IMG/VR virus record: IMGVR_UViG_3300037882_003354
Span: 258,513 to 322,512 of that record
Strand: one strand, 5' to 3'
DNA length: 64,000 nt
The notes below the pieces were generated by a model that saw only the letters and a list, made by a program, of their open reading frames with translations, made no database searches and was not told where the DNA came from. This document shows, piece by piece, positions 36,601 to 50,976 of this stretch. Every line of letters begins with the position of its first letter. Position 1 is the stretch's first letter. The position numbers were made by a program, and so were the translations under genes.

Positions 36601-39600
36601 CTGCCAGTATAACCAATGGATCCAGTATAACCTCGACTGCCGGTGTATCCCAGACTGCCGTCGTATCCTCTGCTGCCGGTATAACCCAGGGACCCAGTGT
36701 ATCCCTGTGGGCCTGACACTGTGCTGTTTGCACCTGAACTGCCAGCATACCCAATGCTGCCAACGTAACCAACTGATCCAGTATAGCCCAGGCTGCCGGT
36801 ATAGCCCAGGCTACCGGCATATCCTGAATCTCCGCGACTGCCAGTATAACCAATGGATCCGGTATAACCAATGCTACCGGTGTATCCTTGACTGCCCACA
36901 TACCCTCGACTGCCAGTGTATCCTTGACTGCCGGTATAACCAATTGACCCAGTGTAACCAGATGGTCCTACAATTACACCAACATCGATAAATCCTGACA
37001 CGTTACCTGGGGCACTGGAATTGGCATACACCCACAAGCGGCCAGTGTCTATTGCAATATATCCATCCCCCAGGGCAGGAGTACTTATGCTTGAAAGGTC
37101 TGACGACGTGAGCACGCTGCCCTTGATGTTAAGTCCAGTGCCAGCACTTCCGGTGTATCCAATACTACCGGTGTATCCTTGACTGCCAGTGTATCCTTGA
37201 CTGCCAGTATAGCCACGACTGCCAGTGTAGCCTATACTTCCAGTATACCCAATTGATCCTGTGTAACCAGTTGATCCCTGATATCCATTAACGCCCTGTG
37301 ATCCATCGTAACCAGCAGAACCAGTATAACCGCGGGATCCTGCATAGCCTGTGGATCCAACATAGCCAACAACGCCGGCGGTGTATGGTACTCCGTTGAT
37401 GCACAGGCCGTTGGCATCCACCTTGATACGCTCGCAAGTGCCAGCACCTATTAACACTGTGCATACACAGCCTGCACCAGCCTGCAACTGACCGATCACT
37501 GTGTTGCTGTGTCCAGTGGTTATGGCACATCCTGCACAAAACCCAATGCCAATGTTGTCGCTGGAAGTTGCACTGGCCAAGGAGTTGACACCGATGGCAA
37601 TATTGCAGTTGCCTGTACTGGAAACACCCAGACTGCCGAATCCCATGCTGATGTTGTCACAACCAGTGATGTTATAAATCAGCGCATTGCAACCCAGGGC
37701 AATATTGCTGTTGCCGAATTCGTTAAAAAATAATGAATTATATCCCATGGCAATATTATTATTGCCAGTGGTGTTACTGTTCAAGGATTGGTAACCCACT
37801 GCAAAGTTATCACAGCCAGTGGTGTTGCCTTGAAGTGCGCTGCCCCCAACGGCCGTGTTGCGTGTGCCCAGCGTGTTTCCGTAGAGAGCTCTGTGTCCAA
37901 TGGCTGTGTTATAACAACCATTGGTGTTGCTATAGAGTGCATATGCACCCTGAGCTGTGTTATTGCAACCAGTGGTATTGTTGTGAAGTGCACTGTAACC
38001 TTGTGCCACGTTATAACAACCGGTGGTATTGCTGAGGAGTGCACTACTGCCCTGAGCAGTATTATAACCACCAAGGGTGTTGTTTTGTAGTGAATTGGCA
38101 CCCTGGGCTGTGTTGAAGCAGCCAGTGGTGTTAGTAATCAGTGCAGCAGCACCTTGAGCTGTATTGTAGCAGCCAGAGGTATTACTATAGAGTACATTGT
38201 TACCCTGACCTGTGTTACCGCAGCCAGTGGTATTACTGTAAAGCGCAGAATAACCCTGGGCTGAGTTGTTACAACCGGTGGTATTACTATAGAGTGCATT
38301 AAAACCCAGAGCTGTGTTGCTGCTGCCCAGTGTGCTGCTGCGTAGTGCTTGGTGTCCGATGGCCGTGTTGTTGATGCCAGAGGTGCTGGATTTTAATGCT
38401 TCTGATCCAATGGCTATATTATAGCCGCCCACAGTATTGGTCACCAGTGCACACAGACCAATGGCTATGTTGTCAGTTCCTGTCTGTGTGGTATTACCCG
38501 AGCAGTAGCCCACGCTGATGTTGCCCAGGTTTGACGTGGTATAAGCATACACTGTGCCCAGTGATGTTGGCGTTGCAGGGCTAGTACTACCGGCACTGAA
38601 TAATGCACCGTTTTGATAAAGGTTGCCATTAAAATGTATGTCACAGCCAACCCCCAGGCCACCCACAATGGTCACGGCACCAGTGATGGTGGAAATGGCA
38701 TTGGCAGTAGACAGCACATTGACATTGGTGGCTGTGGCCGTGAATATGGGAGTACCCAGCGACCTTACAGCCAGGGTTCCTTCAGAGTTGATCAGGTCCA
38801 CACTCTGGCTGGTGCTGTTTTGTATGCTGATGCCCGCAGTATTTGATCCCTTGTTCTTGAAAAGTGCACTGGCAGTAAAACTGGGGAATGTCTGTGCGCT
38901 GTTGATTTCAAAGGTGGATTGATTGCCTGCATATACACCGCCACCCAGCCCCAGCCCGCCAACAACGATCACAGCACCAGTGGTTGTTGATGTGGCAATA
39001 GTGGAACTGGTGACTGCAATTTTGGGCATGGTCAGTATGCCACTGCTGGCCACGTAACTTAGGCCACTGTTGGCACCCAGGCTGAGATAATCTCCCACAG
39101 CCGAAGCCATGGTGGGATAATATACTGTGGAACTGGTATTGGTTATATTATTGACAAAAATCCTGTCGGCCTGGCCGGAAGTAACTGATCCAAAGATGCT
39201 GGAAGTACTAACCCAGGTGGCAGTGGTGCCCTGTGATTGCAACAAATAACCAGCTGTGCCTATGGGAATGAACGCAGTGGTGCTGTTTCCAGTCTGTATG
39301 GGTATGGAGCCAGTGGCGCCGCCCACCAGATTGACTGCAGAATTCACCTGCGCGGGTGCTGACCCGGTGTACCCAATGAGTCCGCGACTGCCTGCATAAC
39401 CAATGCTTCCAGTATAACCCTGAGAACCCACATAACCACGGCTGCCAGTGTACCCAATGCTGCCTGAGTAACCCAGGCCGCTTGAGCCGGTGTAGCCAGT
39501 GCTGCCCAGATATCCACGACTGCCAGTATAGCCTATGCTGCCGGTGTAGCCCAGACTGCCGGCACTGCCATTATATCCTGTGTCTCCTCGACTGCCTGTA

Positions 39601-39797
39601 TACCCGATTAATCCTCGAGATCCAATGTATCCCCTGGGGCCCTGGGGGCCCTGGGCGCCTTCAGTGCCCAGTATTGCTGCGGCTCTCGCCACAGTCAGTG
39701 TCAATTCAGTGCCGCCCTCCGTGACAATAAACAGCGTTTCCCCAACAGTGGGGCTGGTCAGTGGTATTAGAGATTCGAGTTCTTGACGGATGGGCAT
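33678..39797 (-). CDS. long tail fibre / adhesin with collagen-like and YadA-like repeats and C-terminal intramolecular chaperone (peptidase S74)
   Basis: (GYTGSx)n Gly-X-Y tracts, 14-residue NTAxGxxALxxNTTG repeats, SDRRLK auto-cleavage motif, YEKVVPLLVEAIKEL coil; ATAAATA at 39823-39829. Confidence 0.88.
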   Translation of the reverse strand: MPIRQELESLIPLTSPTVGETLFIVTEGGTELTLTVARAAAILGTEGAQGPQGPRGYIGSRGLIGYTGSRGDTGYNGSAGSLGYTGSIGYTGSRGYLGSTGYTGSSGLGYSGSIGYTGSRGYVGSQGYTGSIGYAGSRGLIGYTGSAPAQVNSAVNLVGGATGSIPIQTGNSTTAFIPIGTAGYLLQSQGTTATWVSTSSIFGSVTSGQADRIFVNNITNTSSTVYYPTMASAVGDYLSLGANSGLSYVASSGILTMPKIAVTSSTIATSTTTGAVIVVGGLGLGGGVYAGNQSTFEINSAQTFPSFTASALFKNKGSNTAGISIQNSTSQSVDLINSEGTLAVRSLGTPIFTATATNVNVLSTANAISTITGAVTIVGGLGVGCDIHFNGNLYQNGALFSAGSTSPATPTSLGTVYAYTTSNLGNISVGYCSGNTTQTGTDNIAIGLCALVTNTVGGYNIAIGSEALKSSTSGINNTAIGHQALRSSTLGSSNTALGFNALYSNTTGCNNSAQGYSALYSNTTGCGNTGQGNNVLYSNTSGCYNTAQGAAALITNTTGCFNTAQGANSLQNNTLGGYNTAQGSSALLSNTTGCYNVAQGYSALHNNTTGCNNTAQGAYALYSNTNGCYNTAIGHRALYGNTLGTRNTAVGGSALQGNTTGCDNFAVGYQSLNSNTTGNNNIAMGYNSLFFNEFGNSNIALGCNALIYNITGCDNISMGFGSLGVSSTGNCNIAIGVNSLASATSSDNIGIGFCAGCAITTGHSNTVIGQLQAGAGCVCTVLIGAGTCERIKVDANGLCINGVPYTAGVVGYVGSTGYAGSRGYTGSAGYDGSQGVNGYQGSTGYTGSIGYTGSIGYTGSRGYTGSQGYTGSQGYTGSIGYTGSAGTGLNIKGSVLTSSDLSSISTPALGDGYIAIDTGRLWVYANSSAPGNVSGFIDVGVIVGPSGYTGSIGYTGSQGYTGSRGYVGSQGYTGSIGYTGSIGYTGSRGDSGYAGSLGYTGSLGYTGSVGYVGSIGYAGSSGANSTVSGPQGYTGSLGYTGSRGYDGSLGYTGSRGYTGSIGYTGSLGDTGYVGSRGSRGDFGYTGSLGSGLNIKGSVTEATTSQFASIVGPINIGDGYIAANSGNLWVYSNATAPGNVSGFSDVGKIVGPSGYSGSRGYVGSIGYTGSASNVQGPQGYTGSSGYTGSQGIGYSGSSVLGYTGSVGYVGSRGLLGYTGSGAQGYTGSQGYTGSQGVGYTGSGAQGYTGSSGYAGSQGVGFTGSIGYTGSIGYIGSRGYAGSSGIGYSGSAGYAGSQGIGYTGSGTQGYTGSLGYTGSTGFGYSGSLGYTGSAGAGYVGSAVLGYTGSIGVGYQGSVGYTGSAATGYVGSGVLGYTGSRGLIGYTGSASTGYAGSGVLGYTGSRGDVGYNGSNGYTGSRGYTGSIGYTGSSGYVGSQGYTGSVGWVGSRGDPGYIGSTGYTGSSAAGYVGSSAASTLATPTSLGSVFGYTTGLGNVGIGCCAGNKTQTGCYNFAAGCHALVNNTTGCNNFAQGTSSLGKNTIGNNNFAVGYNALSNNIIGCSNIAIGCFALRQNTTDGNVAIGALAMAANTTGWGNLAVGTGALSNAIENSYNTAVGHNALFSNNSPGPSGYGNNNTAIGACALYFNINGCGNTAQGVGALYCNSGGVNNVAIGYGTLKCNIVGCYNTGLGVGALVQNTGGGCNTAVGNDTLFRNTNGGLNTAVGSYALQCNITGITNTAIGACALNANTSGVDNTAVGWNALVSNTIGSRNIGIGYCAGCAITTGINNTVIGALIGSNGLSSTVLIGAGTAERIRVDSTGILCINSTSSLQFTSVGIGAAASGTAGTLNATLLTTQVGTTNGFLTLRTGTSAKSGYVEFFPHSGGVRQGYIGFVGTNAATIDEGTIPYVAKCHEFSGALTTTGDITAFFSDRRLKTNVCVITDAVTKVRALTGIRYTPNQLAEQLGFSTDESIVGLFADELEAVLPEAVKLAPFDSDENGDSKSGENYRTIQYEKVVPLLVEAIKELSKEFEEFKKKFS
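35390..37370 (-). repeat. collagen-like GYTGSx coding repeats (about 18-bp unit) with a duplicated interrupting domain
   Basis: many imperfect CCAGTGTA/CCGGTGTA units; GLNIKGSV..GDGYIA..LWVY..APGNVSGF.DVG occurs twice; boundaries approximate. Confidence 0.85.
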
Positions 39798-39975: not shown

Positions 39976-40052
39976 ACGGCCATACCGGAACGCTCTTCTA
40001 AAGCGTAGTACCGTAATTGGAGTCAATGTGGGTTCGAGTCCCGCTGGCCGTA
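39976..40052 (+). ncRNA. tRNA-like RNA with Arg(UCU) anticodon arm, no D-arm and expanded variable region
   Basis: acceptor ACGGCCA/TGGCCGT, anticodon arm ACGCT-CTTCTAA-AGCGT, T-arm GTGGG-TTCGAGT-CCCGC; only 7 nt where the D-arm should be. Confidence 0.7.
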
Positions 40053-41694: not shown

Positions 41695-41717
41695 CAGTGA
41701 TTGATAAAAGGATTAAC

Positions 41718-42560
41718 ATGAGCAAGAATTTAGTTTTAGGAGCCGCTTTCGGCTATGGCGTGGAAAAAGTCAAACCATTCGTTCTGTCACTGCGCAGACA
41801 CTATGATGGTATCATTGTGTTTGTGGTTGAGCATGTGACTGATGAATTGGCTGAATTTTATCAGGAGCATGACATTTACACCTGTGTGCCCGAAGGTCCA
41901 GTCAATCGCGGATATGCCAATGTTGATAGATTCAGGTATTATCTGGACTGCCTGGAAAACTTTGACGACATTGACAACGTCATGCTGACCGACATTCGTG
42001 ATGTGGTGTTTCAAAGCAATCCATTTGATCACTATCCCAAACACGATATTGAATTATTTGCTGAACCGGAAGTGTTTGGCAAGTGCAATCATAATGGTCC
42101 TTGGTATTCAGGATTATACGGTGCACAGCAGCTGGACAAGATCAAAGATGAATACGTGCTGTGTGCTGGCACCACCCTGGGCAAGTTTGACACCATGGTG
42201 CAATACATCACAGTTTTGATTGAAGAAATTGCCAAGTTGGAACAGGCAGGCCTGGCACATGGCACCTGCGATCAGGCTGTGCACAATCACATTGTTTATA
42301 CCGGAAGGTTTTCTGATTACCGAATCAATCATAACGGTCAAGGCCTGGTGGCCACCATGCACCATAGCAAGACACTGACATTCGATCGACAGGGACGCAT
42401 GTTAAATCATGACGGCTCGCCCACACCAGTGGTGCATCAATATGATCGGTGTGGTGCCATGAGTGTGGTTTTTCTTAAAAACGCGCTGGGGCTGACAGGC
42501 AAGGGCATTCGAACAGCCGCGGAGTATGCCGCAAATAATTTTTTCGAACATGATTTGTAA
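41718..42560 (+). CDS. putative GT-A glycosyltransferase
   Basis: TDIRDVVFQSNPF, CAGT, DQAVHN, VVHQYDR. Confidence 0.6.
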   Translation: MSKNLVLGAAFGYGVEKVKPFVLSLRRHYDGIIVFVVEHVTDELAEFYQEHDIYTCVPEGPVNRGYANVDRFRYYLDCLENFDDIDNVMLTDIRDVVFQSNPFDHYPKHDIELFAEPEVFGKCNHNGPWYSGLYGAQQLDKIKDEYVLCAGTTLGKFDTMVQYITVLIEEIAKLEQAGLAHGTCDQAVHNHIVYTGRFSDYRINHNGQGLVATMHHSKTLTFDRQGRMLNHDGSPTPVVHQYDRCGAMSVVFLKNALGLTGKGIRTAAEYAANNFFEHDL

Positions 42561-43138
42561 TGATACATGTTATCGCCACATCAGCCAACATAGAAAATAA
42601 TTATGCTGTCAGGAAGCAGCAGTATCTAACCGGACTGTGTAGTATTATTTCAAATTATAAAATCAATCCTTACATCATAGAAACTTGCAGTCCAACAAAC
42701 TACCTAGCTGAACATTTTGTTGGACATAGCAATTACTCGGAAAACAAAGGAATTAGTGAATTTATCAATATCGATAACTTTTTTAAGAACACTGATTTAA
42801 AATTGGAAGATGACGATGTTATTATTAAAACTTCTCTGAGATACGAGATCGTCTCTCCACATTTACTAGATGTAATCAAATCTAATGATCACGAAGTATA
42901 CTGTAAATCTTCATCGGACATTTATGGACCTCAAGACACCGGTGTGCATTGTTTTTTATTTGCCATGAAATATAAATGTTGGAAAAACTTTTTAAATACA
43001 TTCGATAGACATGTGCACCGTGATCAACCCATAGAGGGTCAATTGGCAGATTACTTCAAAAAAACAGATACTAAATATCTGGATAAACTGGGCATACTAG
43101 CAAATCCAGCCAATCATAACAAAATTTACACAGTATAA
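42560..43138 (+). CDS. hypothetical protein (glycosylation island)
   Basis: AT-rich ORF, NKG.SE, IIKTSLRY. Confidence 0.65.
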   Translation: MIHVIATSANIENNYAVRKQQYLTGLCSIISNYKINPYIIETCSPTNYLAEHFVGHSNYSENKGISEFINIDNFFKNTDLKLEDDDVIIKTSLRYEIVSPHLLDVIKSNDHEVYCKSSSDIYGPQDTGVHCFLFAMKYKCWKNFLNTFDRHVHRDQPIEGQLADYFKKTDTKYLDKLGILANPANHNKIYTV

Positions 43139-43146
43139 AGGCAAAC

Positions 43147-43686
43147 ATGTCACATCAAGCACAAATAGATTATTGTCTCTGGGTAAAGAACAAATTCCCA
43201 GAATTTTTTAAAAACACACGAGTGGTTGATTTCGGGTCCTTGGACATCAACGGCAGCAACCGGCGTTTCTTTGACAATTGTGAGTACACTGGTTTAGACA
43301 TTGGTGCTGGCAACAATGTGGACATTGTCACCAGGGCACACGAATATCATGCCCCGGATGCACACTACGATGTGGTGGTTTCTACAGAAATGTTTGAACA
43401 TGACAAATACCTGCATCTCAGTCTGCCCAACATGGTCAGGGTACTGAGACCCGGCGGCCTGTTTTTCTGGACATGTGCAACCACAGGCAGGCATGAGCAT
43501 GGGACTAGGAGAACAGAACCTTCTGCATCTCCGTTCACATCGCAAGCAGACGATGGCTGGGATGACTTCTACGAAAATGTAGACCAAGCCAAGGTCAGAC
43601 AAATATTAGACATCGATGCTCTGTTCAGCGAGTATGCATTTGATGTTCTGGGATATGACATCAGATTTTATGGAATAAAAAAATAA
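43147..43686 (+). CDS. class I SAM-dependent methyltransferase
   Basis: VVDFGSLDING, YTGLD, EMFEHD, LRPGG. Confidence 0.88.
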   Translation: MSHQAQIDYCLWVKNKFPEFFKNTRVVDFGSLDINGSNRRFFDNCEYTGLDIGAGNNVDIVTRAHEYHAPDAHYDVVVSTEMFEHDKYLHLSLPNMVRVLRPGGLFFWTCATTGRHEHGTRRTEPSASPFTSQADDGWDDFYENVDQAKVRQILDIDALFSEYAFDVLGYDIRFYGIKK

Positions 43687-43763
43687 TCAAAAAGCAGTCG
43701 ACAGCGGCAGCAGCCGACTGTATACTATACGTCATAGTATTGAAACAAATTAGTGTGTTATAC

Positions 43764-43836
43764 TCTCCAGTAGCTCAGCGGTAGTAGCATTTGACTGTTA
43801 ATCAAAGGGTCCGTGGTTCGATCCCACGCTGGAGAG
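43764..43836 (+). tRNA. tRNA-Asn(GTT), CCA not encoded
   Basis: TCTCCAG/CTGGAGA acceptor, TTTGA-CTGTTAA-TCAAA, TTCGATC T-loop. Confidence 0.92.
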
Positions 43837-43854
43837 CATAACACATTAATTCAT

Positions 43855-43930
43855 GGGCTGTGATTGAGCTGGGGTTCTTGGCTGCTTTGCAAGCAGTTAT
43901 CGGTGGGTTCGATTCCCACACGGTCCACCA
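43855..43930 (+). tRNA. tRNA-Ala(TGC)
   Basis: loop TTTGCAA, G3:U70 pair, CCA end. Confidence 0.85.
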
Positions 43931-43940
43931 AAATGATAAA

Positions 43941-44028
43941 GGAAGATTGGCAGAGTGGCCGATTGCGTCAGTCTTGAAAACTGAAGACCCCAACGGGTCC
44001 GTGAGTTCGAATCTCACATCTTCCTCCA
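43941..44028 (+). tRNA. tRNA-Ser(TGA)
   Basis: TCAGT-CTTGAAA-ACTGA, long variable arm, CCA. Confidence 0.93.
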
Positions 44029-44030
44029 AG

Positions 44031-44059
44031 TTGACATGAGCAGCGACCGGCTGTACAAT
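44031..44059 (+). promoter_or_regulatory. sigma70-type promoter
   Basis: TTGACA-17bp-TACAAT before tRNA-Lys. Confidence 0.75.
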
Positions 44060-44067
44060 CAGATCAT

Positions 44068-44143
44068 GGGACGATAGCTCAGTTGGTAGAGCAGTAGACT
44101 TTTAATTTATTGGCCGTGGGATCGTGCCCCACTCGTCCCACCA
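44068..44143 (+). tRNA. tRNA-Lys(TTT)
   Basis: GGGACGA/TCGTCCC, loop CTTTTAA, atypical T-loop ATCGTGC, CCA. Confidence 0.88.
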
Positions 44144-44254
44144 TATTAAAACACATTCAACGGCAACCGGGATACCTAGCAACTGGACGCAGGGGCTATC
44201 CAAATAGTAGGGCACTACAGCCGAAAGCTAGGACTAGAGTGTGTTTCCATATGG
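44141..44254 (+). ncRNA. unknown structured RNA 1
   Basis: closing helix CCATAT..AAACACATT / AGTGTGTTT..ATATGG, inner CCTAGC/GCTAGG helix and several small hairpins; no ORF. Confidence 0.6.
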
Positions 44255-44498
44255 TGGATTAATTGTGTTGTCATGGAAAATGGCTGTGTTCACCAGCCCA
44301 GTGTTAAGAGATCAATTGGGGGAGTGCCGGCTTCGATCATGATCATAGATCATGGTTCAACCCAATCTCAACGGAGACGACGAATCCTGGACCACACAGT
44401 CCGGGCAATAAGCGTCCGGGGAAAGAAAAAATATTTCCATCCCACAAACGACAGCAGGGCGATTGCTGTTCATAATATGACAACACAATTAATCCACC
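44253..44498 (+). ncRNA. unknown structured RNA 2, bounded by a perfect 22-bp inverted repeat
   Basis: GGTGGATTAATTGTGTTGTCAT (44253-44274) / ATGACAACACAATTAATCCACC (44477-44498); interior made of hairpins. Confidence 0.65.
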
Positions 44499-44541
44499 TG
44501 GCAAGATACACGTTATAAATACACGTGAAGAACAATGAACT

Positions 44542-44629
44542 GGATAGTTGGCCGAGTGGTTAAGGCAACGGTTTGCTAAACCGTCGCTCCGAAAGGGGCG
44601 CATAGGTTCGAATCCTATACTATCCGCCA
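44542..44629 (+). tRNA. tRNA-Ser(GCT)
   Basis: ACGGT-TTGCTAA-ACCGT, long variable arm, G73, CCA; TATAAATA at 44514-44521 upstream. Confidence 0.93.
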
Positions 44630-44639
44630 AATTTATCCT

Positions 44640-44715
44640 GGGTCCTTAACTCAGCCGGTAGAGTGTCTGCCTTAAAGGCAGAATGTCGTCAGTTCGAACC
44701 TGGCAGGACCCACCA
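44640..44715 (+). tRNA. tRNA with TAA anticodon (Leu) and short variable loop
   Basis: GGGTCCT/AGGACCC, TCTGC-CTTAAAG-GCAGA, 5-nt variable loop, CCA. Confidence 0.8.
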
Positions 44716-44721
44716 ACACAT

Positions 44722-44803
44722 GCATCAGTGTCAGATTGGGAATGAAGCGGTCTGCAAAACCGCTCCGAAAGGGAAGTAGGTTCGATTCCTACCTGATGCT
44801 CCA
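44722..44803 (+). tRNA. tRNA-Cys(GCA) with extra variable arm
   Basis: GCATCAG/CTGATGC, U73, GCGGT-CTGCAAA-ACCGC, small GAAA-capped variable arm. Confidence 0.85.
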
Positions 44804-45015: not shown

Positions 45016-45837
45016 ATGATCATAGATTGCTTTACATTTTTTAACGAGCTGGATGTGCTGGAGGGTAGATTGGAATATCTGTATGACACAGTGGATTATT
45101 TTGTCATTGTGGAAGCCGATATAACACACAGTGGTGCTGCCAAGCCCATGCAATATGCAGAAAACATGCGTCGGTACCACAAGTATTCAAAGAAAATATT
45201 GTACATGCCCGTGTCCATTGATCCCAGTCAGTACAATCTTGATTACCGGCCTGCGACATTTGAACCCACTGCACCACAATGGAGTGTGGAAAATCTGCAA
45301 AGGAATCACATAGCCAAGGCCTTGGCGCTGTTTCCTGATGATGCCATGGTGGGCATAAGTGATGCGGATGAAATCCCCAGCAAATCAGCCATTGAACTGG
45401 CCAAGTACATCCTGGGTTCTGAAACAGAGGCCTGCTGTCTGGAGCAAGAGATGTTTTATTATAATTTCCGCCAGCAGGCCACCATTGGATGGATACCTGG
45501 TGCCCTGGTCACCAACCGATTTGCCAAGCAAGTGTCTCCGCAGGGAGTTAGAAATCAAGCCATGTGGGGTCAGTTAACTCGAATTCCACAGGGTGGCTGG
45601 CACCTGAGCTATTGGGGATCGCCTGAAGACATTTCGTATAAAATTAAAAATTTTGCACATCAAGAACTAAACAATGCTGAATTCACTAACATTGATAACA
45701 TTCAACAACGTATAGCAACAGGGCGAGACCCGTTCGACCGTGCACCTATGGTGCATGTGGATCCCATGAGTTTGCCCAAATTGCCACACGAAGTGGTTGG
45801 TATTTTTGGCAAAGATTTTAAAAATTTTACACGCTGA
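45016..45837 (+). CDS. GT17-like glycosyltransferase
   Basis: DCFTFFNELD, VDYFVIVEA..THSG..KP, ENLQRN, SDADEIP, GWHLSY, KIKNFAHQE. Confidence 0.85.
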   Translation: MIIDCFTFFNELDVLEGRLEYLYDTVDYFVIVEADITHSGAAKPMQYAENMRRYHKYSKKILYMPVSIDPSQYNLDYRPATFEPTAPQWSVENLQRNHIAKALALFPDDAMVGISDADEIPSKSAIELAKYILGSETEACCLEQEMFYYNFRQQATIGWIPGALVTNRFAKQVSPQGVRNQAMWGQLTRIPQGGWHLSYWGSPEDISYKIKNFAHQELNNAEFTNIDNIQQRIATGRDPFDRAPMVHVDPMSLPKLPHEVVGIFGKDFKNFTR

Positions 45838-45856
45838 CACCTGGAGTAATTAACAC

Positions 45857-47509
45857 ATGATCATAGATTGCTTTACATTTTTTAACGAACTTGATCTGCT
45901 GGAAGGCAGGTTGGAATATCTGTATGATACAGTGGATTATTTTGTCATTGTGGAAGCTGATGTAACACACAGTGGCCAACCTAAACCACTCAACTATCTG
46001 GAAAATATTGCAAGGTATCACAAATTTTCTGATAAAATTCTGTACTTTCCAGTGCACATTGATGTCAGCGCATACGATTGGAGTGTCAAACATGCTGCAG
46101 ATGACCTAACATCACCACACTGGCAAGTGGAAAACCTGCAGCGCAATCACATAGCCACAGCGTTGAAATTATTTGATCCACAAGCATGGATCATGATTGG
46201 AGATCTGGATGAAATACCCAACCGTGATGTGATCCAGTATGCAATATCATGTGTAAATGACACCCAGCCCATGTGTACTTTCAGGCAGGACATGTTCTAT
46301 TATAATTTCAATCAAAAGCAAATTGGCTCCTGGCCGGGCACAGTGGTGACCACCAATCAATACGTGATTAATCATGGCCCACAACAGATCAGAATGTGGC
46401 GATGGGGCTTTGGAGTCACGTGCGGCTGGCACCTGAGCTACTGGGGTTCACCAGAAAAGATTAAACTTAAACTGGAAAATTTTGCACATCATGAATATAA
46501 CACAAGTGAGTTTACTGATGTGGATAAAATAGCAGAACGAATTAAAGCAGGCAAGGATATATTTGATCGTGGTGATCACTGCCGATGTATTCCAGTGGAT
46601 CGATCTTCACTGCCTGCAGATTTATTGAGAGTATTCGGAAAATACGAAATTATAAATGTTGATAACACAGTCCACCAACCTAAGAATTTAGTGCTGGGAA
46701 TTGCACTGGGCTACGGTGTGGACGAAATAAAGAATTTTATTTTAAGTTTTAGGGCGTACAACCAACGGGATTGCATCAACCTGATCATGGACCAGTCCAC
46801 ACTGGATAAAACCCAGAATTTTTTAAAGTCACAAAATGTGGACATCACGTTGTTTGATCTGCATGATGCAATGGGCACCACACCAGTGAACAATCTCAGA
46901 TTTGAACAATATGGAAAGATTATCACTCAGGGAACATATAAAAATATTTTATCAACTGACATTCGGGATGTGATATTCCAGAAAGATCCCTTTGTAAACC
47001 TGCCCGACCATCCCTACCTGTACTTGTTTCAAGAAGACAGTGGTGTCCCCATTGGTGAAGAAGTATACAATTCATTGTGGATAAAAAATGCATATGGTGA
47101 TCAAATACTAGATCAAATAAAAGATCAATTGGTCATCTGCGTGGGCACAGTCATGGCCAGCGCACCAAAGATGTTGGAGTATGTGGATTTCGTCACTGCT
47201 GAATTAAAAAAATTCAAGGAAAGATCCCCGGATGTCTGGAGAGCCCATGCGTTTGAACAGGCGCCGGGCATGTATTTGGGTTATGCAAAAGAACAAAAGA
47301 TTCAGGGCCTGGAAATAAAACCCAGCGGACACATTGTGGGCACCATAGGACTGTCCCTGACACACCACCTGGCCCGTGATCAAATAGAAGGTCGAGGGGA
47401 CGGATTCGTCTACGTGAACGGTCTAGTGCCGGAGATAATCCACCAATATGACCGACACAAAGAGCTGGTGGCATTCTTCAATCAGAAATACAGCATGCCT
47501 GAGTCCTAA
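45857..47509 (+). CDS. GT17-like domain fused to a second GT-like domain (paralog of 41718..42560)
   Basis: N-terminal half as for 45016; C-terminal KNLVLG..GYGV, TDIRDVIFQKDPF, IIHQYDR. Confidence 0.82.
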   Translation: MIIDCFTFFNELDLLEGRLEYLYDTVDYFVIVEADVTHSGQPKPLNYLENIARYHKFSDKILYFPVHIDVSAYDWSVKHAADDLTSPHWQVENLQRNHIATALKLFDPQAWIMIGDLDEIPNRDVIQYAISCVNDTQPMCTFRQDMFYYNFNQKQIGSWPGTVVTTNQYVINHGPQQIRMWRWGFGVTCGWHLSYWGSPEKIKLKLENFAHHEYNTSEFTDVDKIAERIKAGKDIFDRGDHCRCIPVDRSSLPADLLRVFGKYEIINVDNTVHQPKNLVLGIALGYGVDEIKNFILSFRAYNQRDCINLIMDQSTLDKTQNFLKSQNVDITLFDLHDAMGTTPVNNLRFEQYGKIITQGTYKNILSTDIRDVIFQKDPFVNLPDHPYLYLFQEDSGVPIGEEVYNSLWIKNAYGDQILDQIKDQLVICVGTVMASAPKMLEYVDFVTAELKKFKERSPDVWRAHAFEQAPGMYLGYAKEQKIQGLEIKPSGHIVGTIGLSLTHHLARDQIEGRGDGFVYVNGLVPEIIHQYDRHKELVAFFNQKYSMPES

Positions 47510-47567
47510 CATGCAGTTGACTGTTCAGTTGACCATGTAGTATACTATCATTTACAAAGGAAAAACC

Positions 47568-47774
47568 ATGCCCAGACACTCATCACAACAAGCAGTAGAA
47601 GCCGTTGGCAATCGCTATGACCTGGTGCACATTGCCAGCATCCGAGCACGAGAATTGTCTCGTGGTGCCGCGCCCTTGATCCCCACCACCAACGGATTTC
47701 TAGTAACTGCACTAGCAGAAATCCAGGCTGGCGAGGTGGGTCGCGAATACCTGGATAAATTAAAACAACGGTAA
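47568..47774 (+). CDS. rpoZ: RNA polymerase omega subunit homolog
   Basis: AVEAVGNRYDLVHIASIRAREL...VTALAEIQAG; TTGACT-18bp-TATACT at 47517-47546. Confidence 0.88.
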   Translation: MPRHSSQQAVEAVGNRYDLVHIASIRARELSRGAAPLIPTTNGFLVTALAEIQAGEVGREYLDKLKQR

Positions 47775-47784
47775 AAAAATAATT

Positions 47785-47869
47785 GGGAATGTGGCGTAAT
47801 TGGTAGCCGCACCAGATTTAGGTTCTGGCGCCGAAAGGTGTGTGAGTTCGAGTCTCACCATTCCCACCA
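47785..47869 (+). tRNA. tRNA-Leu(TAG)
   Basis: CCAGA-TTTAGGT-TCTGG, long variable arm, CCA. Confidence 0.93.
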
Positions 47870-47892
47870 AAAATAACAAAAGGCGATACAAC

Positions 47893-48135
47893 ATGGAAAT
47901 AACACAACTAGAAATGGCATACACAGATCTGATCACAGATGCCAGTCCCGCCACCTTGCACATGGCAAATCGCGTGCGTGATATACTCATGCAGCATGCG
48001 CCAGGCAACATGGACTCACTGGGCATGTTGACTGCACTGGATCCAGTGAGCCAGATTGAATTTCTGCCCAAAAGAGAACAAATGAAAAAATATATGAATT
48101 TGGTTTCTATTGCCATCAGGGACACAGCACCATGA
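47893..48135 (+). CDS. hypothetical protein
   Basis: ATG 47893 after the tRNA, AGG upstream. Confidence 0.6.
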   Translation: MEITQLEMAYTDLITDASPATLHMANRVRDILMQHAPGNMDSLGMLTALDPVSQIEFLPKREQMKKYMNLVSIAIRDTAP

Positions 48136-48389
48136 CCAACCTGATAAAAGAAACACTGGAAAACGGCGACGTCTACGAATTTGATCTGGACGTATGCAAC
48201 GCAGCGGCTGATCAGGCGCTGGAAGAACTCTTGGAAAAAGAGGGCGAGGTGGAAAACTTTGACTTTGTGGCCAGCGTCTTCAGCTTGTTTGTGGCCAGCA
48301 TCAGCATCCTGACTCAGTCGGGTTGGACCACGGATGAGTTGATCAACGAAGTCATGGCCAGCACAGAACATACGGACACACAACATTAA
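48132..48389 (+). CDS. small acidic hypothetical protein
   Basis: very D/E-rich 85 aa. Confidence 0.7.
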   Translation: MTNLIKETLENGDVYEFDLDVCNAAADQALEELLEKEGEVENFDFVASVFSLFVASISILTQSGWTTDELINEVMASTEHTDTQH

Positions 48390-48403
48390 CACAAGGAAAT
48401 CAA

Positions 48404-48586
48404 ATGAGCCACGGTGGAAAAGGCAGTAGAGCAAGACCCTACAGCGTGACCAATGACGAGTATTCTCGACGGTGGGACGCCATCTTTGGTCGCGACCTGG
48501 ATAAAAAGACCCCGCCTGAAGAACCCACGCCGCCTGAAGTCGCTCCTGTGGAAAATGACACACACCCAATGCCCGCTGATAAGTAA
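48404..48586 (+). CDS. hypothetical protein
   Basis: GGKGSRARP...WDAIFG; AAGGA RBS. Confidence 0.7.
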   Translation: MSHGGKGSRARPYSVTNDEYSRRWDAIFGRDLDKKTPPEEPTPPEVAPVENDTHPMPADK

Positions 48587-48628
48587 TCATTGACACTGTA
48601 TAAGAAATTTGTTATAATAATAAAATAC

Positions 48629-48711
48629 GCTGGAGTCGCATAGTGGCAATTGCAACGGTTTTGTAAGCCGTCGGGAAACCTCCGTGAGTTCGAGTCTCAC
48701 CTTCAGCACCA
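48629..48711 (+). tRNA. tRNA-Thr(TGT) with extra variable arm
   Basis: G1:C72, C2:G71, ACGGT-TTTGTAA-GCCGT, GG-GAAA-CC variable stem; TTGACA-17bp-TATAAT at 48590-48618. Confidence 0.85.
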
Positions 48712-48733
48712 ATCGACATATAAAGTACATGGA

Positions 48734-48809
48734 GCGGCGTTAGCTCAGTTGGTAGAGCGCGATCCTTCCACGTTCGAGGTCATCGGTTCGAGCCCGATAC
48801 GCCGCTCCA
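48734..48809 (+). tRNA. tRNA-Gly(TCC)
   Basis: GCGGCGT/ACGCCGC, U73, loop CTTCCAC, CCA. Confidence 0.9.
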
Positions 48810-48837
48810 TGTACTTCAACCTTTCAACCTCTTAATC

Positions 48838-49398
48838 ATGTCATTAACTGAATTTGCAAAAAACCATCATCCCAGAACCGACAAATACGACCTGGGATAC
48901 ATTGACGAATTTTACCATGAGTTGTTTGCACCCAGGGTGCATGCTGTAAAAAATTTACTCGAGATTGGAGTTTATCAGGGCAATTCCATTCTACTGTGGC
49001 GAGACTTCTTCCCCCATGCATCCATCACTGGAGTGGACATCAATCAATGTCCGCGATTGCACTCGGAACCCAGGGTAAATGTTTTTTACGAAAACGCTTA
49101 TGCCCAAAGTTTTGTTGACAAATTTCCCAAGAACTTGTTTGACGTCATTATTGACGATGGTCCGCACACATTTGAAAGCATGGAGTTCTTCTTAAAGAAT
49201 TATCTAGCCTTGGTCAAGCCTGGTGGATTGTTGATTTTAGAGGACATCATTAATCCTGCATGGACTCCTGAGTTATTGAAATTGATTGATCCTGGGGTCA
49301 GCAAGGTCACAGTGGTGGACATGCGAGGCAAGCAACTTAATGCTAATTTGTTGCAAGATTGGAAAAACGGTCTCGATGTAATTATTGTGGAAAAGTGA
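48838..49398 (+). CDS. class I SAM-dependent O-methyltransferase-like
   Basis: TDK, LLEIGV, GVDI, FDVIIDDGPH, KPGG..ILED. Confidence 0.88.
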   Translation: MSLTEFAKNHHPRTDKYDLGYIDEFYHELFAPRVHAVKNLLEIGVYQGNSILLWRDFFPHASITGVDINQCPRLHSEPRVNVFYENAYAQSFVDKFPKNLFDVIIDDGPHTFESMEFFLKNYLALVKPGGLLILEDIINPAWTPELLKLIDPGVSKVTVVDMRGKQLNANLLQDWKNGLDVIIVEK

Positions 49399-50899: not shown

Positions 50900-50976
50900 G
50901 GGACGGCAGCTTGAGCATGAGGAGCACGGGTCTCATAAACCCGAGGTAATGGGTGCGAATCCCATACGTCCTACCA
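50900..50976 (+). tRNA. tRNA(CAT), probably tRNA-Ile2 (lysidine substrate)
   Basis: CGGGT-CTCATAA-ACCCG, A73, CCA; next to tilS; atypical T-loop TGCGAAT; TTGACA-17bp-TATACT at 50840-50868. Confidence 0.78.

What the first reader, a model, noticed from the sequence alone, without database searches (positions are those of the whole stretch)
44141..44254. Unassigned about 114-nt multibranch RNA directly after tRNA-Lys
A long closing helix begins with the CCA of tRNA-Lys itself. Inside are CGG-CAA-CCG, CCTAGC/GCTAGG, CTG-GACG-CAG, CTAT-CCAA-ATAG and GTAG-GGCA-CTAC. Most bases can pair and there is no ORF. It matches no family I recognise; it may be a stable small RNA like those in T4 tRNA clusters, a ribozyme, or a switch controlling tRNA-Lys 3' maturation.
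Basis: partly seen in the sequence, partly recalled or inferred. Interest (0 to 1): 0.65.

Follow-up and report, generated by a model that had tools for sequence, protein, structure and literature searches.

The report
Conserved pseudoknotted RNA in phage tRNA array
The stretch after tRNA-Lys is a real, conserved, pseudoknotted small RNA of a family not in Rfam, carried in a hairpin "cassette" that freshwater T4-like phages place between tRNA genes and swap among themselves; its function is still unknown.

Summary
The 114-nt element (44141-44254) is real. It folds far better than shuffles (z -4.5). It has at least 82 distinct homologues in freshwater phage contigs, and none in Rfam 15, GenBank phages or the searched literature.

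The closing helix, CCTAGC/GCTAGG, CTG-GACG-CAG and GTAG-GGCA-CTAC are conserved and mostly covary. CGG-CAA-CCG and CTAT-CCAA-ATAG are not conserved. Long-range helices A (CGGC/GCCG) and C (GGAUA/UAUCC) take their place, which makes CCUAGC/GCUAGG a pseudoknot.

There are two modules:
- **W**, the pseudoknotted core. It also occurs with other closing helices, once with no tRNA in 14.5 kb.
- **P0**, an 18-bp sequence-conserved stem. It is shared by at least 159 elements with about 126 unrelated interiors, nearly all in T4-like tRNA arrays. It usually starts at the upstream tRNA's CCA and often ends on the first GG of the next tRNA.

P0-type cassettes also fill the excised intervening segment of two phage permuted tmRNA genes.

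Best reading (about 0.5): an intervening-sequence-like cassette, cut out by tRNA end-processing, that yields a stem-capped small RNA whose W core binds a partner. No RNA ends were observed. A switch specific to tRNA-Lys is unlikely, and the HDV-like ribozyme criteria fail.

The parts
44031..44059 (+). Sigma-70-like promoter (TTGACA, 17 nt, TACAAT) directly upstream of tRNA-Lys. It probably starts the unit tRNA-Lys, W, element B, tRNA-Ser, tRNA-Leu, tRNA-Cys.
   Evidence: 11 of 12 consensus matches, the best site in the region. No terminator-like site on the + strand between it and tRNA-Cys. This is a consensus match only.
44068..44143 (+). tRNA-Lys(UUU). Its 3' CCA (44141-44143) forms the first three pairs of the closing stem.
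   Evidence: ARAGORN; Rfam tRNA model, 66.5 bits.
44141..44158 (+). P0 stem, 5' arm (CCAUAU-UA-AAACACAUUC).
   Evidence: Pairs with 44237-44254. 16 of 18 pairs show changes on both sides across 82 distinct homologues. The same arm occurs in 159 distinct elements.
44237..44254 (+). P0 stem, 3' arm (GAGUGUGUUU-CC-AUAUGG). It carries the conserved U.G wobble (44156 with 44239) and an A.C mismatch (44148 with 44247).
   Evidence: The wobble is U.G in 117, U-A in 23 and C-G in 18 of 159 elements. The wobbles fit the tRNA strand only.
44161..44164 (+). Helix A, 5' strand (CGGC). It pairs with 44220-44223 (GCCG).
   Evidence: One pair is C-G in 38 and U-A in 37 sequences; 100% of cells are paired. 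Also predicted by RNAalifold.
44170..44174 (+). Helix C, 5' strand (GGAUA). It pairs with 44197-44201 (UAUCC).
   Evidence: First pair is G-C in 65 and C-G in 14 sequences. RNAalifold predicts it.
44175..44180 (+). Helix B, 5' strand (CCUAGC). This pseudoknot partner of 44227-44232 lies inside the loop of helix C.
   Evidence: 4 of 6 pairs change on both sides, for example A-U in 48 and G-C in 31 sequences; 99.8% of cells are paired.
44183..44192 (+). Hairpin P3 (CUG-GACG-CAG). With its flanks AA and GGGC it is the most conserved stretch of the family.
   Evidence: Invariant in 82 sequences, but partly by ascertainment. A scan that left it free found only one variant, with the loop CAUG.
44197..44201 (+). 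Helix C, 3' strand (UAUCC).
44207..44218 (+). Hairpin P4 (GUAG-GGCA-CUAC).
   Evidence: Other members carry GCA-GGCA-UGC, GUG-AGGCA-CAC or CUAGG-CCUUGA-CCUAG. The alignment register differs between subtypes, so the counts understate the pairing.
44220..44223 (+). Helix A, 3' strand (GCCG), followed by the conserved AAA.
44227..44232 (+). Helix B, 3' strand (GCUAGG), between helix A and the P0 3' arm.
44253..44498 (+). Element B. This second hairpin-closed unit overlaps the last GG of P0. It has a 22-bp perfect stem, a 202-nt interior and an 81-aa ORF (44273-44518).
   Evidence: Inverted repeat I1. 97% identical in L408, with one compensatory stem change. In L419 it lies behind a P0 cassette with a different interior. 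A 79-aa ORF 61% identical to it exists elsewhere.
44542..44803 (+). Downstream tRNA-Ser(GCU), tRNA-Leu(UAA) and tRNA-Cys(GCA) of the same array.

Best explanation
The element is a two-module RNA cassette transcribed with the tRNA array of a 322-kb T4-like freshwater phage.

**Module 1, the P0 stem.** P0 is an 18-bp stem conserved in sequence. It behaves like the intervening sequences of 23S rRNA genes and of two-piece tmRNA genes. It sits exactly where tRNA-type end processing cuts: after the CCA of the upstream tRNA and, in many loci, before G1 of the next tRNA. The cassette is therefore cut out without harming its neighbours, and it leaves as a hairpin whose long stem protects both ends. In this window the 3' side abuts element B, not a tRNA, so that end would need another nuclease; RNase III acting on the long duplexes is the obvious candidate.

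**Module 2, the W core.** W comprises helices A, C, P3 and P4 and the pseudoknot B, with invariant junction bases. It is the functional cargo: a compact fold that most likely binds a protein or small ligand in trans during infection.

**How far each step is supported**
- Shown: the fold, its covariation, its family, the modularity and the exact junctions.
- Inferred: excision, stability and action in trans.
- Unknown: the partner.
For: **W is a real structured RNA**
- 82 distinct sequences. 95% of pair cells are standard pairs, against 30-44% when the partners are slid by 1-3 columns. 27 of 40 pairs change on both sides.
- It is a discrete family. The covariance model scores members at 95-124 bits and other P0 elements at 37 bits or less.

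**W is autonomous**
- The same core occurs with unrelated long closing helices in L304, L282/L292 and L341. In L304 there is no tRNA in 14.5 kb.

**P0 is a shared module**
- 159 distinct elements, all but one within 1.5 kb of tRNA genes.
- 93 of 95 elements with an ARAGORN tRNA close upstream start at that tRNA's CCA. In 36 the last GG is the start of the next tRNA.
- The outer two pairs still covary when no tRNA supplies them.

**P0-type cassettes sit in a segment known to be excised**
- They fill the intervening segment of phage permuted tmRNA genes, between the acceptor piece's CCA and the 5' GGG of the coding piece (L166). L099 has a degenerate version of the stem.
- The L166 interior is 100% identical to one lying between tRNA-Lys and tRNA-His in L119.

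**The cassettes are conserved or exchanged as units**
- They are 97-100% identical between phages whose coding DNA is about 70% identical and whose flanks differ.
- Behind near-identical tRNA-Lys genes, 90% of pairs carry unrelated interiors.

**Transcription**
- A strong promoter-like site lies just upstream, with no terminator-like site in between.
- An RNA-library contig of a relative spans W into B.
Against: - No RNA ends, abundance or stability were observed. The RNA runs were available only as contigs and could contain DNA.
- In this window the 3' arm is followed by element B, not by a tRNA, so RNase P cannot define that end.
- The phage encodes no RNase III, Ro/TROVE, RtcB or PF04308 nuclease. 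No protein gene is specifically linked to W.
- The strong sequence conservation of P0 goes beyond what pairing needs and is not explained by this model.
- Most other interiors are only weakly structured (mean z -0.5), so many cassettes may carry no functional cargo.
Confidence: 0.5

Rival explanations
1. The cassette is a selfish, intervening-sequence-like mobile element. It spreads between tRNA junctions by recombination at the conserved arms or by an unknown enzyme. It is tolerated because tRNA processing removes it. W is conserved for the element's own propagation or is a passenger.
For: - Identical cassettes in different junctions and in diverged phages.
- About 126 interior types in one stem.
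- Hypervariable content behind near-identical tRNA-Lys genes.
- HNH, DUF559 and NUMOD3 homing-endonuclease genes are common in these arrays.
- The pattern resembles the sporadic 23S rRNA intervening sequences (established knowledge).
Against: - There is one copy in this 322-kb genome.
- No target-site duplication: the flanks are complementary (CCA and UGG), not direct repeats.
- No transposase-like gene is linked to it.
- The wobble pattern is strand-specific and follows the tRNA strand.
- The W core is kept with covariation even when the stem is replaced. That argues for a function of the RNA itself.
Confidence: 0.15
2. The long stem is only a processing stalk or insulator, for example an RNase III site, that separates the tRNAs of a polycistronic precursor. 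The interior is incidental.
For: - An AU-rich duplex of 18-20 bp lying flush with tRNA ends.
- The analogy with rRNA processing stalks, and the reported RNase III cleavage of T4 species 1 RNA (recalled from memory, not checked here).
Against: - Most tRNA junctions in the same arrays are 1-12 nt spacers with no stem, so tRNA maturation does not need it.
- W's interior is conserved with covariation and has invariant unpaired bases.
- W also exists away from tRNAs.
Confidence: 0.12
3. W is a self-cleaving ribozyme of a new class, or a very aberrant HDV-like one, that frees itself or the neighbouring tRNA.
For: - A compact pseudoknot with invariant junction nucleotides (AA, GGGC, AAAG, CCG-AAA).
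- The order of helices C, B, P3, C', P4, B' matches P1, P2, P3, P1', P4, P2' of HDV-like ribozymes.
- Theta ribozymes show that phages do place ribozymes next to tRNAs (PMC10879173).
Against: - The first pair of the would-be P1 is G-C or C-G, never a G.U wobble.
- Four nucleotides separate P3 from the P1 3' strand.
- The P3 loop has only 4 nt and there is no GG to form P1.1.
- The candidate catalytic C is paired in the covarying helix A.
- The core lies 29 nt from the CCA, not within 5 nt.
- No Rfam ribozyme model matches at E <= 10.
Confidence: 0.1
4. It is a cis-acting switch. By pairing the CCA of tRNA-Lys, or by toggling between helix B and the alternative local pairing AGC/GCU, it controls 3' maturation of the upstream tRNA or expression of what follows. 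It might respond to a ligand.
For: - The CCA lies in the stem in most copies.
- Upstream tRNAs are strongly biased to Lys(UUU), Glu(UUC) and Gln(UUG): 64 of 89.
- RNAalifold offers an alternative partner for the AGC of helix B.
Against: - W follows many different tRNAs. In some loci it lies 3-4 nt after the tRNA, so the CCA is not in the stem. It also occurs with no tRNA nearby.
- There is no terminator or ribosome-binding-site platform and no consistent downstream gene.
- Compensatory changes support helix B and not the local alternative.
Confidence: 0.08

Closest known systems
Intervening segment of two-piece (permuted) tmRNA genes, and intervening sequences of bacterial 23S rRNA genes
   Same: - A hairpin-forming insert at a point where the precursor is cut and not re-joined.
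- Sporadic occurrence and variable content.
- P0-type cassettes occupy the tmRNA intervening segment in L166 and, in degenerate form, in L099.
   Different: - Here the host junction is the gap between two separate tRNAs, or between a tRNA and another cassette.
- The stem sequence is conserved across many phages.
- At least one cargo, W, is itself a conserved pseudoknotted RNA.
- Excision has not been observed.
T4 small stable RNAs, species 1 (rnaC) and species 2 (rnaD)
   Same: - Non-tRNA RNAs of about 120-140 nt lying 1-6 nt from their neighbours in the tRNA cluster of a T4-type phage.
- Function unknown.
   Different: - No similarity in sequence or fold. rnaC is tRNA-like with a T arm, rnaD ends in ACCA, and neither has an 18-bp terminal stem or this pseudoknot.
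- W and P0 are absent from GenBank phage records.
HDV-like theta ribozymes next to phage tRNAs (PMC10879173)
   Same: - A small pseudoknotted RNA downstream of phage tRNAs.
- The same order of interleaved helices.
   Different: - The defining HDV-like features are not met (see the membership test).
- Theta ribozymes lie within 5 nt of tRNAs that mostly lack an encoded CCA, in gut phages. W lies 29 nt after an encoded CCA, inside a long stem, in freshwater T4-like phages.
YrlA / bacterial Y RNAs
   Same: - A long stem formed by the 5' and 3' ends, with a conserved sequence, capped by a variable module.
- Some other P0 interiors carry T-arm-like hairpins (18 of 159).
   Different: - No Ro/TROVE gene in the phage.
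- The Rfam YrlA model does not match the element.
- The stem sequence differs as far as I recall it, which was not checked here.
GOLLD and other large ornate RNAs of lake phages
   Same: - Same habitat and the same kind of locus. A GOLLD RNA lies in the tRNA array of L166, 5 nt before a P0 cassette.
   Different: - W is about 75 nt without its stem, and it is unrelated in sequence and model.

Membership tests
Any Rfam 15 family | Covariance-model match at the gathering score, or at least at E <= 10 | tested here: not met
   No hit in 44141-44254 at the gathering score or at E <= 10 in a 1.2-kb search. In a 114-nt search the only hit is an 8-bit chance match.
HDV-like / theta ribozymes | Nested double-pseudoknot order P1, P2, P3, P1', P4, P2' | tested here: inconclusive
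   Helices C, B, P3 and P4 follow this order. An extra covarying helix A pairs the 5' leader with the would-be J4/2.
HDV-like / theta ribozymes | G at +1 forming a G.U wobble at the base of P1 | tested here: not met
   The first pair of helix C is G-C in 65, C-G in 14, A-U in 1 and G-U in 1 sequence.
HDV-like / theta ribozymes | A 3-bp P3 abutting the P1 3' strand, with an L3 long enough to form P1.1 with GG after P1 | tested here: not met
   The invariant GGGC separates P3 from the helix C 3' strand. The loop has 4 nt. After helix C comes NAAAG, not GG.
HDV-like / theta ribozymes | Unpaired catalytic C as the first base of J4/2 | tested here: inconclusive
   RCCG-AAA resembles the C-GAA of HDV and CPEB3 (recalled from memory). 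These C residues are paired in the covarying helix A.
HDV-like / theta ribozymes | Cleavage site within about 5 nt of the tRNA 3' end; self-cleavage in vitro | tested here: not met
   The core begins 29 nt after the CCA, against +/- 5 nt in the paper. Self-cleavage itself cannot be tested with these tools.
T4 species 1 / species 2 RNAs | Homology in sequence or structure to rnaC or rnaD | tested here: not met
   Comparing the T4 sequences and folds with the element's fold by eye shows no P0 stem and no W motifs. No formal alignment or model search was run. Searching W against GenBank phages, which include T4, gives no relevant hit.
YrlA / Y RNA | Ro (TROVE) protein gene in the genome and a match to the YrlA model | tested here: not met
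   No PF05731 hit in the 322-kb genome. The only YrlA hit, at E 2.8, lies over tRNA-Ser and tRNA-Lys, not over the element.
Excised intervening sequence (23S rRNA type, two-piece tmRNA type) | Hairpin insert lying exactly at RNA processing boundaries | tested here: met
   The 5' end is flush with the CCA here and in 93 of 95 elements with an ARAGORN tRNA close upstream. The 3' end is on G1-G2 of the next tRNA in 36. P0-type cassettes sit in the intervening segment of permuted tmRNA genes.
Excised intervening sequence (23S rRNA type, two-piece tmRNA type) | Physical excision from the precursor, for example by RNase III or RNase P | not testable with these tools
   Only assembled contigs of RNA runs were available.
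Riboswitch | Conserved aptamer upstream of a recurrent gene set, with an expression platform | tested here: not met
   What follows W varies: tRNA-His, Met, Glu, Ser, element B or ORFs. No terminator-like site follows it. No protein cluster is associated with it.
MITE-like transposable element | Terminal inverted repeats plus a target-site duplication and several near-identical copies per genome | tested here: not met
   Inverted arms are present. The flanks, however, are the complementary CCA and UGG. The own genome holds a single copy. The arms differ consistently at two positions, in a way that gives RNA wobbles on the tRNA strand.
W family (defined here) | Covariance model R1 score well above that of other P0 elements; helices A, B, C, P3 and P4 present | tested here: met
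   The window scores 113.6 bits; non-W P0 elements score 37 bits or less. All helices are present. The window sequence was one of the 31 used to build R1, so its own score is not independent evidence.
P0 cassette superfamily (defined here) | 18-bp stem CCAUAU-NN-AAACACAUU / AGUGUGUUU-NN-AUAUGG on the tRNA strand within a phage tRNA array | tested here: met

The most novel reading that the evidence does not exclude
The tRNA arrays of freshwater T4-like phages hold an exchangeable library of small-RNA cassettes, a kind of 'RNA integron'. One conserved 18-bp stem acts both as the processing and stability handle and as the recombination handle. More than a hundred different cargos are swapped between phages under diversifying selection, for example as RNA decoys or inhibitors of host defence or translation factors. 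W would be one such cargo and the founding member of a new aptamer or ribozyme class.
Probability: 0.2. Interest if true: 0.9.

Novelty: new variant of a known kind. Interest (0 to 1): 0.72.

Why it matters
**What is new**
- Small stable RNAs in phage tRNA clusters have been known since T4 species 1 and 2, and their function is still unexplained.
- This work defines a well-supported new family, W, with a pseudoknot and at least 82 distinct members.
- It also defines a much larger modular system, P0. One stem conserved in sequence carries about 126 unrelated interiors. It sits precisely at tRNA and tmRNA processing junctions and is exchanged between diverged phages.
- None of this is in Rfam 15, in GenBank phage records or in the searched literature.

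**What it makes testable**
- How non-tRNA RNAs use the tRNA maturation machinery to be expressed.
- Whether phages trade RNA cargos the way they trade protein anti-defence genes.

**Practical value**
- A short, self-contained, probably nuclease-resistant scaffold that can be placed between tRNAs could be useful for RNA expression.

Tried and rejected
- **Rfam.** Gathering and E <= 10 searches gave nothing for W or for other P0 cassettes.
- **GenBank phages.** BLAST with the region, a minimal P0 hairpin and W gave no relevant hit. The low-complexity filter may hide AU-rich arms.
- **Literature.** Searches by topic and by literal sequence found nothing.
- **Prokaryote genomes.** The two-arm P0 pattern gave only 6 hits, all on freshwater MAG contigs that are probably mis-binned phage. 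A host origin is therefore rejected.
- **Enzymes encoded by the phage.** There is no Ro/TROVE, RNase III, RtcB or PF04308 in the genome.
- **Partner protein by neighbourhood.** The most common neighbours are T4 replication genes, RegA, HNH endonucleases and a PF04308 RNase H-like protein. None is specific to W.
- **RNA evidence.** Two metatranscriptome runs hold parts of the region, but only as contigs. One contig of a relative spans 44169-44431. There is no information on ends.
- **HDV-like/theta ribozyme.** Rejected on the defining features (paper).
- **A processing duplex used in either orientation.** The inverted arrangement around tRNA-Asn occurs only in this phage and its close relative L408, so the idea does not generalise.
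- **Interiors as antisense guides.** Interior matches outside the masked cassettes lead to the same cassettes in other contigs. I did not check every match.
- **Element B homologues.** None among the loci held. Three close relatives turned up later.

Full report
**1. The locus**

The window is the last 64 kb of a 322,512-bp virus record with direct terminal repeats. The record encodes a T4-type major capsid protein.

Positions 43764-44803 hold seven tRNA genes. A strong sigma-70-like promoter match (TTGACA, 17 nt, TACAAT; 44031-44059) lies directly before tRNA-Lys(UUU), which spans 44068-44143. No terminator-like site follows on the + strand up to tRNA-Cys. The 398 nt between tRNA-Lys and tRNA-Ser(GCU) hold two hairpin-closed units:
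- the reported element, 44141-44254;
- element B, 44253-44498.

**2. Checking the observation**

The closing helix is real and begins with the tRNA's CCA. The stretch folds at -38.3 kcal/mol, against -23.4 +/- 3.3 for shuffles (z -4.5). Rfam 15 has no match, even at E <= 10. The only reading frame through it is a 50-aa TTG frame that starts inside the tRNA.

**3. Homologues of the stem (P0)**

A BLAST of the spacer against loci fetched through the neighbouring glycosyltransferase gene found only the two arms of the closing helix, in other phage tRNA arrays.

- 117 of 147 matches had the partner arm within 400 nt.
- With looser patterns, 159 distinct elements were collected. All but one lie within 1.5 kb of tRNA genes.
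- In 93 of 95 elements with an ARAGORN tRNA close upstream, the element's first base is C74 of that tRNA. In 36 elements its last two bases are G1-G2 of the next tRNA.
- The upstream tRNA is Lys(UUU) in 42, Glu(UUC) in 12 and Gln(UUG) in 10 of 89.

The stem has 18 pairs.
- Pair 7 covaries: A-U 82, U-A 59, G-C 12.
- Pair 16 is a U.G wobble in 117, U-A in 23 and C-G in 18.
- Pair 8 is often an A.C mismatch.
- The wobbles fit the tRNA strand only.

This sample was ascertained through the 5' arm. The W set, which was ascertained through the interior, is therefore the fairer test, and most of its members still carry the P0 consensus.

**4. Homologues of the interior (W)**

One element of that sample, in L134, shared the window's interior. 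A scan for CTGGACGCAGGGGCT found 42 instances in IMG/VR. A 20-mer scan of metagenome contigs found 97 more stretches.

A covariance model built from 31 sequences scores members at 95-124 bits and other P0 elements at 37 bits or less. W is therefore a discrete family.

Counts on 82 distinct sequences:
- 95.2% of pair cells are standard pairs, against 30-44% when the partners are slid by 1-3 columns.
- 27 of 40 pairs change on both sides.
- P0: 16 of 18 pairs change on both sides.
- Helix A (CGGY/RCCG): one pair is C-G in 38 and U-A in 37.
- Helix C (GGAUA/UAUCC): the first pair is G-C in 65 and C-G in 14.
- Helix B (CCUAGC/GCUAGG): 4 of 6 pairs change on both sides.

RNAalifold finds P0, A, C and P3 on its own. 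It offers a local AGC/GCU pairing in place of B, but that pairing varies on one side only.

Because B crosses A and C, the fold is a pseudoknot, or possibly a set of alternating conformers.

The P3 stem and its flanks (AA, GGGC) are invariant. A scan that left P3 free found one variant, with a different loop.

**5. Two separable modules**

Four members (L304, L282/L292, L341, L291) keep helices A, B, C, P3 and P4, with compensatory changes. They close with unrelated long stems of 17-20 bp. L304 has no tRNA in 14.5 kb.

Conversely, 157 P0 interiors fall into 126 clusters. Their folding z-scores are only slightly negative (mean -0.5). Among 42 cassettes flush behind tRNA-Lys(UUU), median pairwise identities are:
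- tRNA: 0.70
- stem arms: 0.92
- interiors: 0.47

Where the tRNA-Lys genes are at least 90% identical, 90% of pairs carry unrelated interiors. Yet a given cassette can be 97-100% identical between phages whose coding DNA is about 70% identical and whose flanks differ.

**6. Link to known excised segments**

In L166 the Rfam model for permuted tmRNA aligns across a P0 cassette. The cassette lies exactly between the CCA end of the acceptor piece and the 5' GGG of the coding piece, which is the intervening segment removed during maturation of two-piece tmRNAs. L099 shows a degenerate version of the stem at the same place. The L166 interior is 100% identical to a cassette lying between tRNA-Lys and tRNA-His in L119.

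P0 cassettes thus sit at CCA-3' / 5'-G junctions of whatever kind. This is the main basis for inferring that tRNA end-processing cuts them out.

**7. Context and distribution**
- Neighbouring genes are those of T4-like phages: RegA, clamp loader, T4 RNase H, family B DNA polymerase, dCMP deaminase. HNH and other homing-endonuclease genes are frequent.
- The same arrays also hold GOLLD RNA, permuted tmRNA and a group I intron.
- The sequencing runs that contain the region come from freshwater and lake metagenomes.
- P0 is absent from GenBank phage records. In 185,579 prokaryote genomes it occurs only on six freshwater MAG contigs.
- The phage has one W copy and encodes no Ro/TROVE, RNase III, RtcB or PF04308 protein.
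- No protein cluster is specific to W loci.

**8. Known families considered**
- **HDV-like/theta ribozymes** share the order of interleaved helices. They fail on the G.U wobble at +1, on P3 abutting P1, on L3 and P1.1, and on distance from the tRNA (PMC10879173).
- **T4 rnaC and rnaD** share only the genomic context.
- **YrlA** shares the idea of a conserved terminal stem capped by a variable module, but neither the Ro gene nor the model matches.
- The **riboswitch** and **MITE** criteria are not met.

**9. Interpretation**
- Shown: the fold, its covariation, the family, the modular architecture, the exact junctions, and the occupancy of a tmRNA intervening segment.
- Inferred: co-transcription from the promoter at 44031; excision by the enzymes that mature the flanking tRNAs, with a second nuclease such as RNase III needed where, as here, the 3' neighbour is another hairpin; survival of the stem-capped RNA; and action of the W core in trans on an unknown partner.
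- Unexplained: why the stem sequence is conserved so strongly, and why Lys(UUU), Glu(UUC) and Gln(UUG) tRNAs are preferred upstream.
- RNA-library contigs show that a relative's W-B segment is present in a metatranscriptome, but nothing about ends.

I put about 0.5 on the excised functional small RNA. The rivals are a selfish cassette (0.15), a mere processing stalk (0.12), a ribozyme (0.10) and a cis-acting switch (0.08).

Noticed in passing
window 44253-44498: Element B has a 22-bp perfect inverted repeat (GGTGGATTAATTGTGTTGTCAT and its complement) closing 202 nt that contain an 81-aa basic ORF (44273-44518). It is 97% identical in L408, with one compensatory stem change; all three interior substitutions fall on third codon positions. 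In L419 it lies behind a P0 cassette with a different interior. A 79-aa ORF elsewhere is 61% identical. Whether it is a structured RNA or a small protein gene is undecided.
   Followed up: partly
window 43748-43851: tRNA-Asn has no encoded CCA. It is bracketed by the same duplex motif in inverted order (TTAGTGTGTTATA ... ATAACACATTAA), which extends its acceptor stem by about 14 pairs, including the U.G wobble. Only this phage and its close relative L408 show this arrangement.
   Followed up: partly
L166 812-1112; L099 8496-8776 (-); L119 7946-8051 (-): Phage-encoded permuted (two-piece) tmRNA genes carry a P0-type cassette as their intervening segment. The L166 interior recurs, 100% identical, between tRNA-Lys and tRNA-His in L119.
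   Followed up: yes
L166 2633-3098; L163 13185-13378 (-): A GOLLD RNA (202 bits) and a group I intron (53 bits) lie in the same kind of tRNA array. In L166 the GOLLD RNA ends 5 nt before a P0 cassette.
   Followed up: no
P0 elements in L090-L208: The tRNA immediately upstream of P0 is strongly biased to Lys(UUU), Glu(UUC) and Gln(UUG): 64 of 89. In bacteria these are the three tRNAs with 2-thiouridine derivatives at the wobble base, and they are classic anticodon-nuclease targets (my recollection). No explanation was found.
   Followed up: no
window 43698-43726 and 44031-44059: Two promoter-like modules stand before tRNA-Asn and tRNA-Lys. Their G+C-rich 17-nt spacers are similar (GCGGCAGCAGCCGACTG and TGAGCAGCGACCGGCTG). 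Similar TTGACA...TATAAT-type sites are visible in related arrays.
   Followed up: no
L363, L385, L409: Some contigs carry two diverged W copies in one tRNA array. The window's genome has one.
   Followed up: no
L151 6948-7176, L185, L191; L104 12211-12455, L128, L176: Two families of long P0 interiors (about 210-245 nt), both beginning GGGTTACC, are conserved across contigs. Neither has an Rfam match at the gathering score.
   Followed up: no
window 39976-40052 and 50901-50972; 43855-43930: Rfam's tRNA model finds two extra weak tRNA-like sequences (40.6 and 29.3 bits) that ARAGORN does not call. tRNA-Ala(UGC) scores only 31 bits.
   Followed up: no
window 41697-43686 and 45016-49398: The tRNA array lies among sugar- and methyl-transfer genes: two tandem GT17-family glycosyltransferases (45016-45837 and 45857-47509), another glycosyltransferase-like ORF, and two SAM methyltransferases. 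A 2039-aa ORF lies upstream on the minus strand, at 33678-39797.
   Followed up: no
window 44169-44431, run X19: A 469-nt contig from a freshwater metatranscriptome matches W's interior and element B with 3 differences. Upstream of 44169 it carries a different P0 5' arm and helix A variant (CCATATAAGAACACATTCACGGTT). This suggests recombination inside the cassette in a relative.
   Followed up: no
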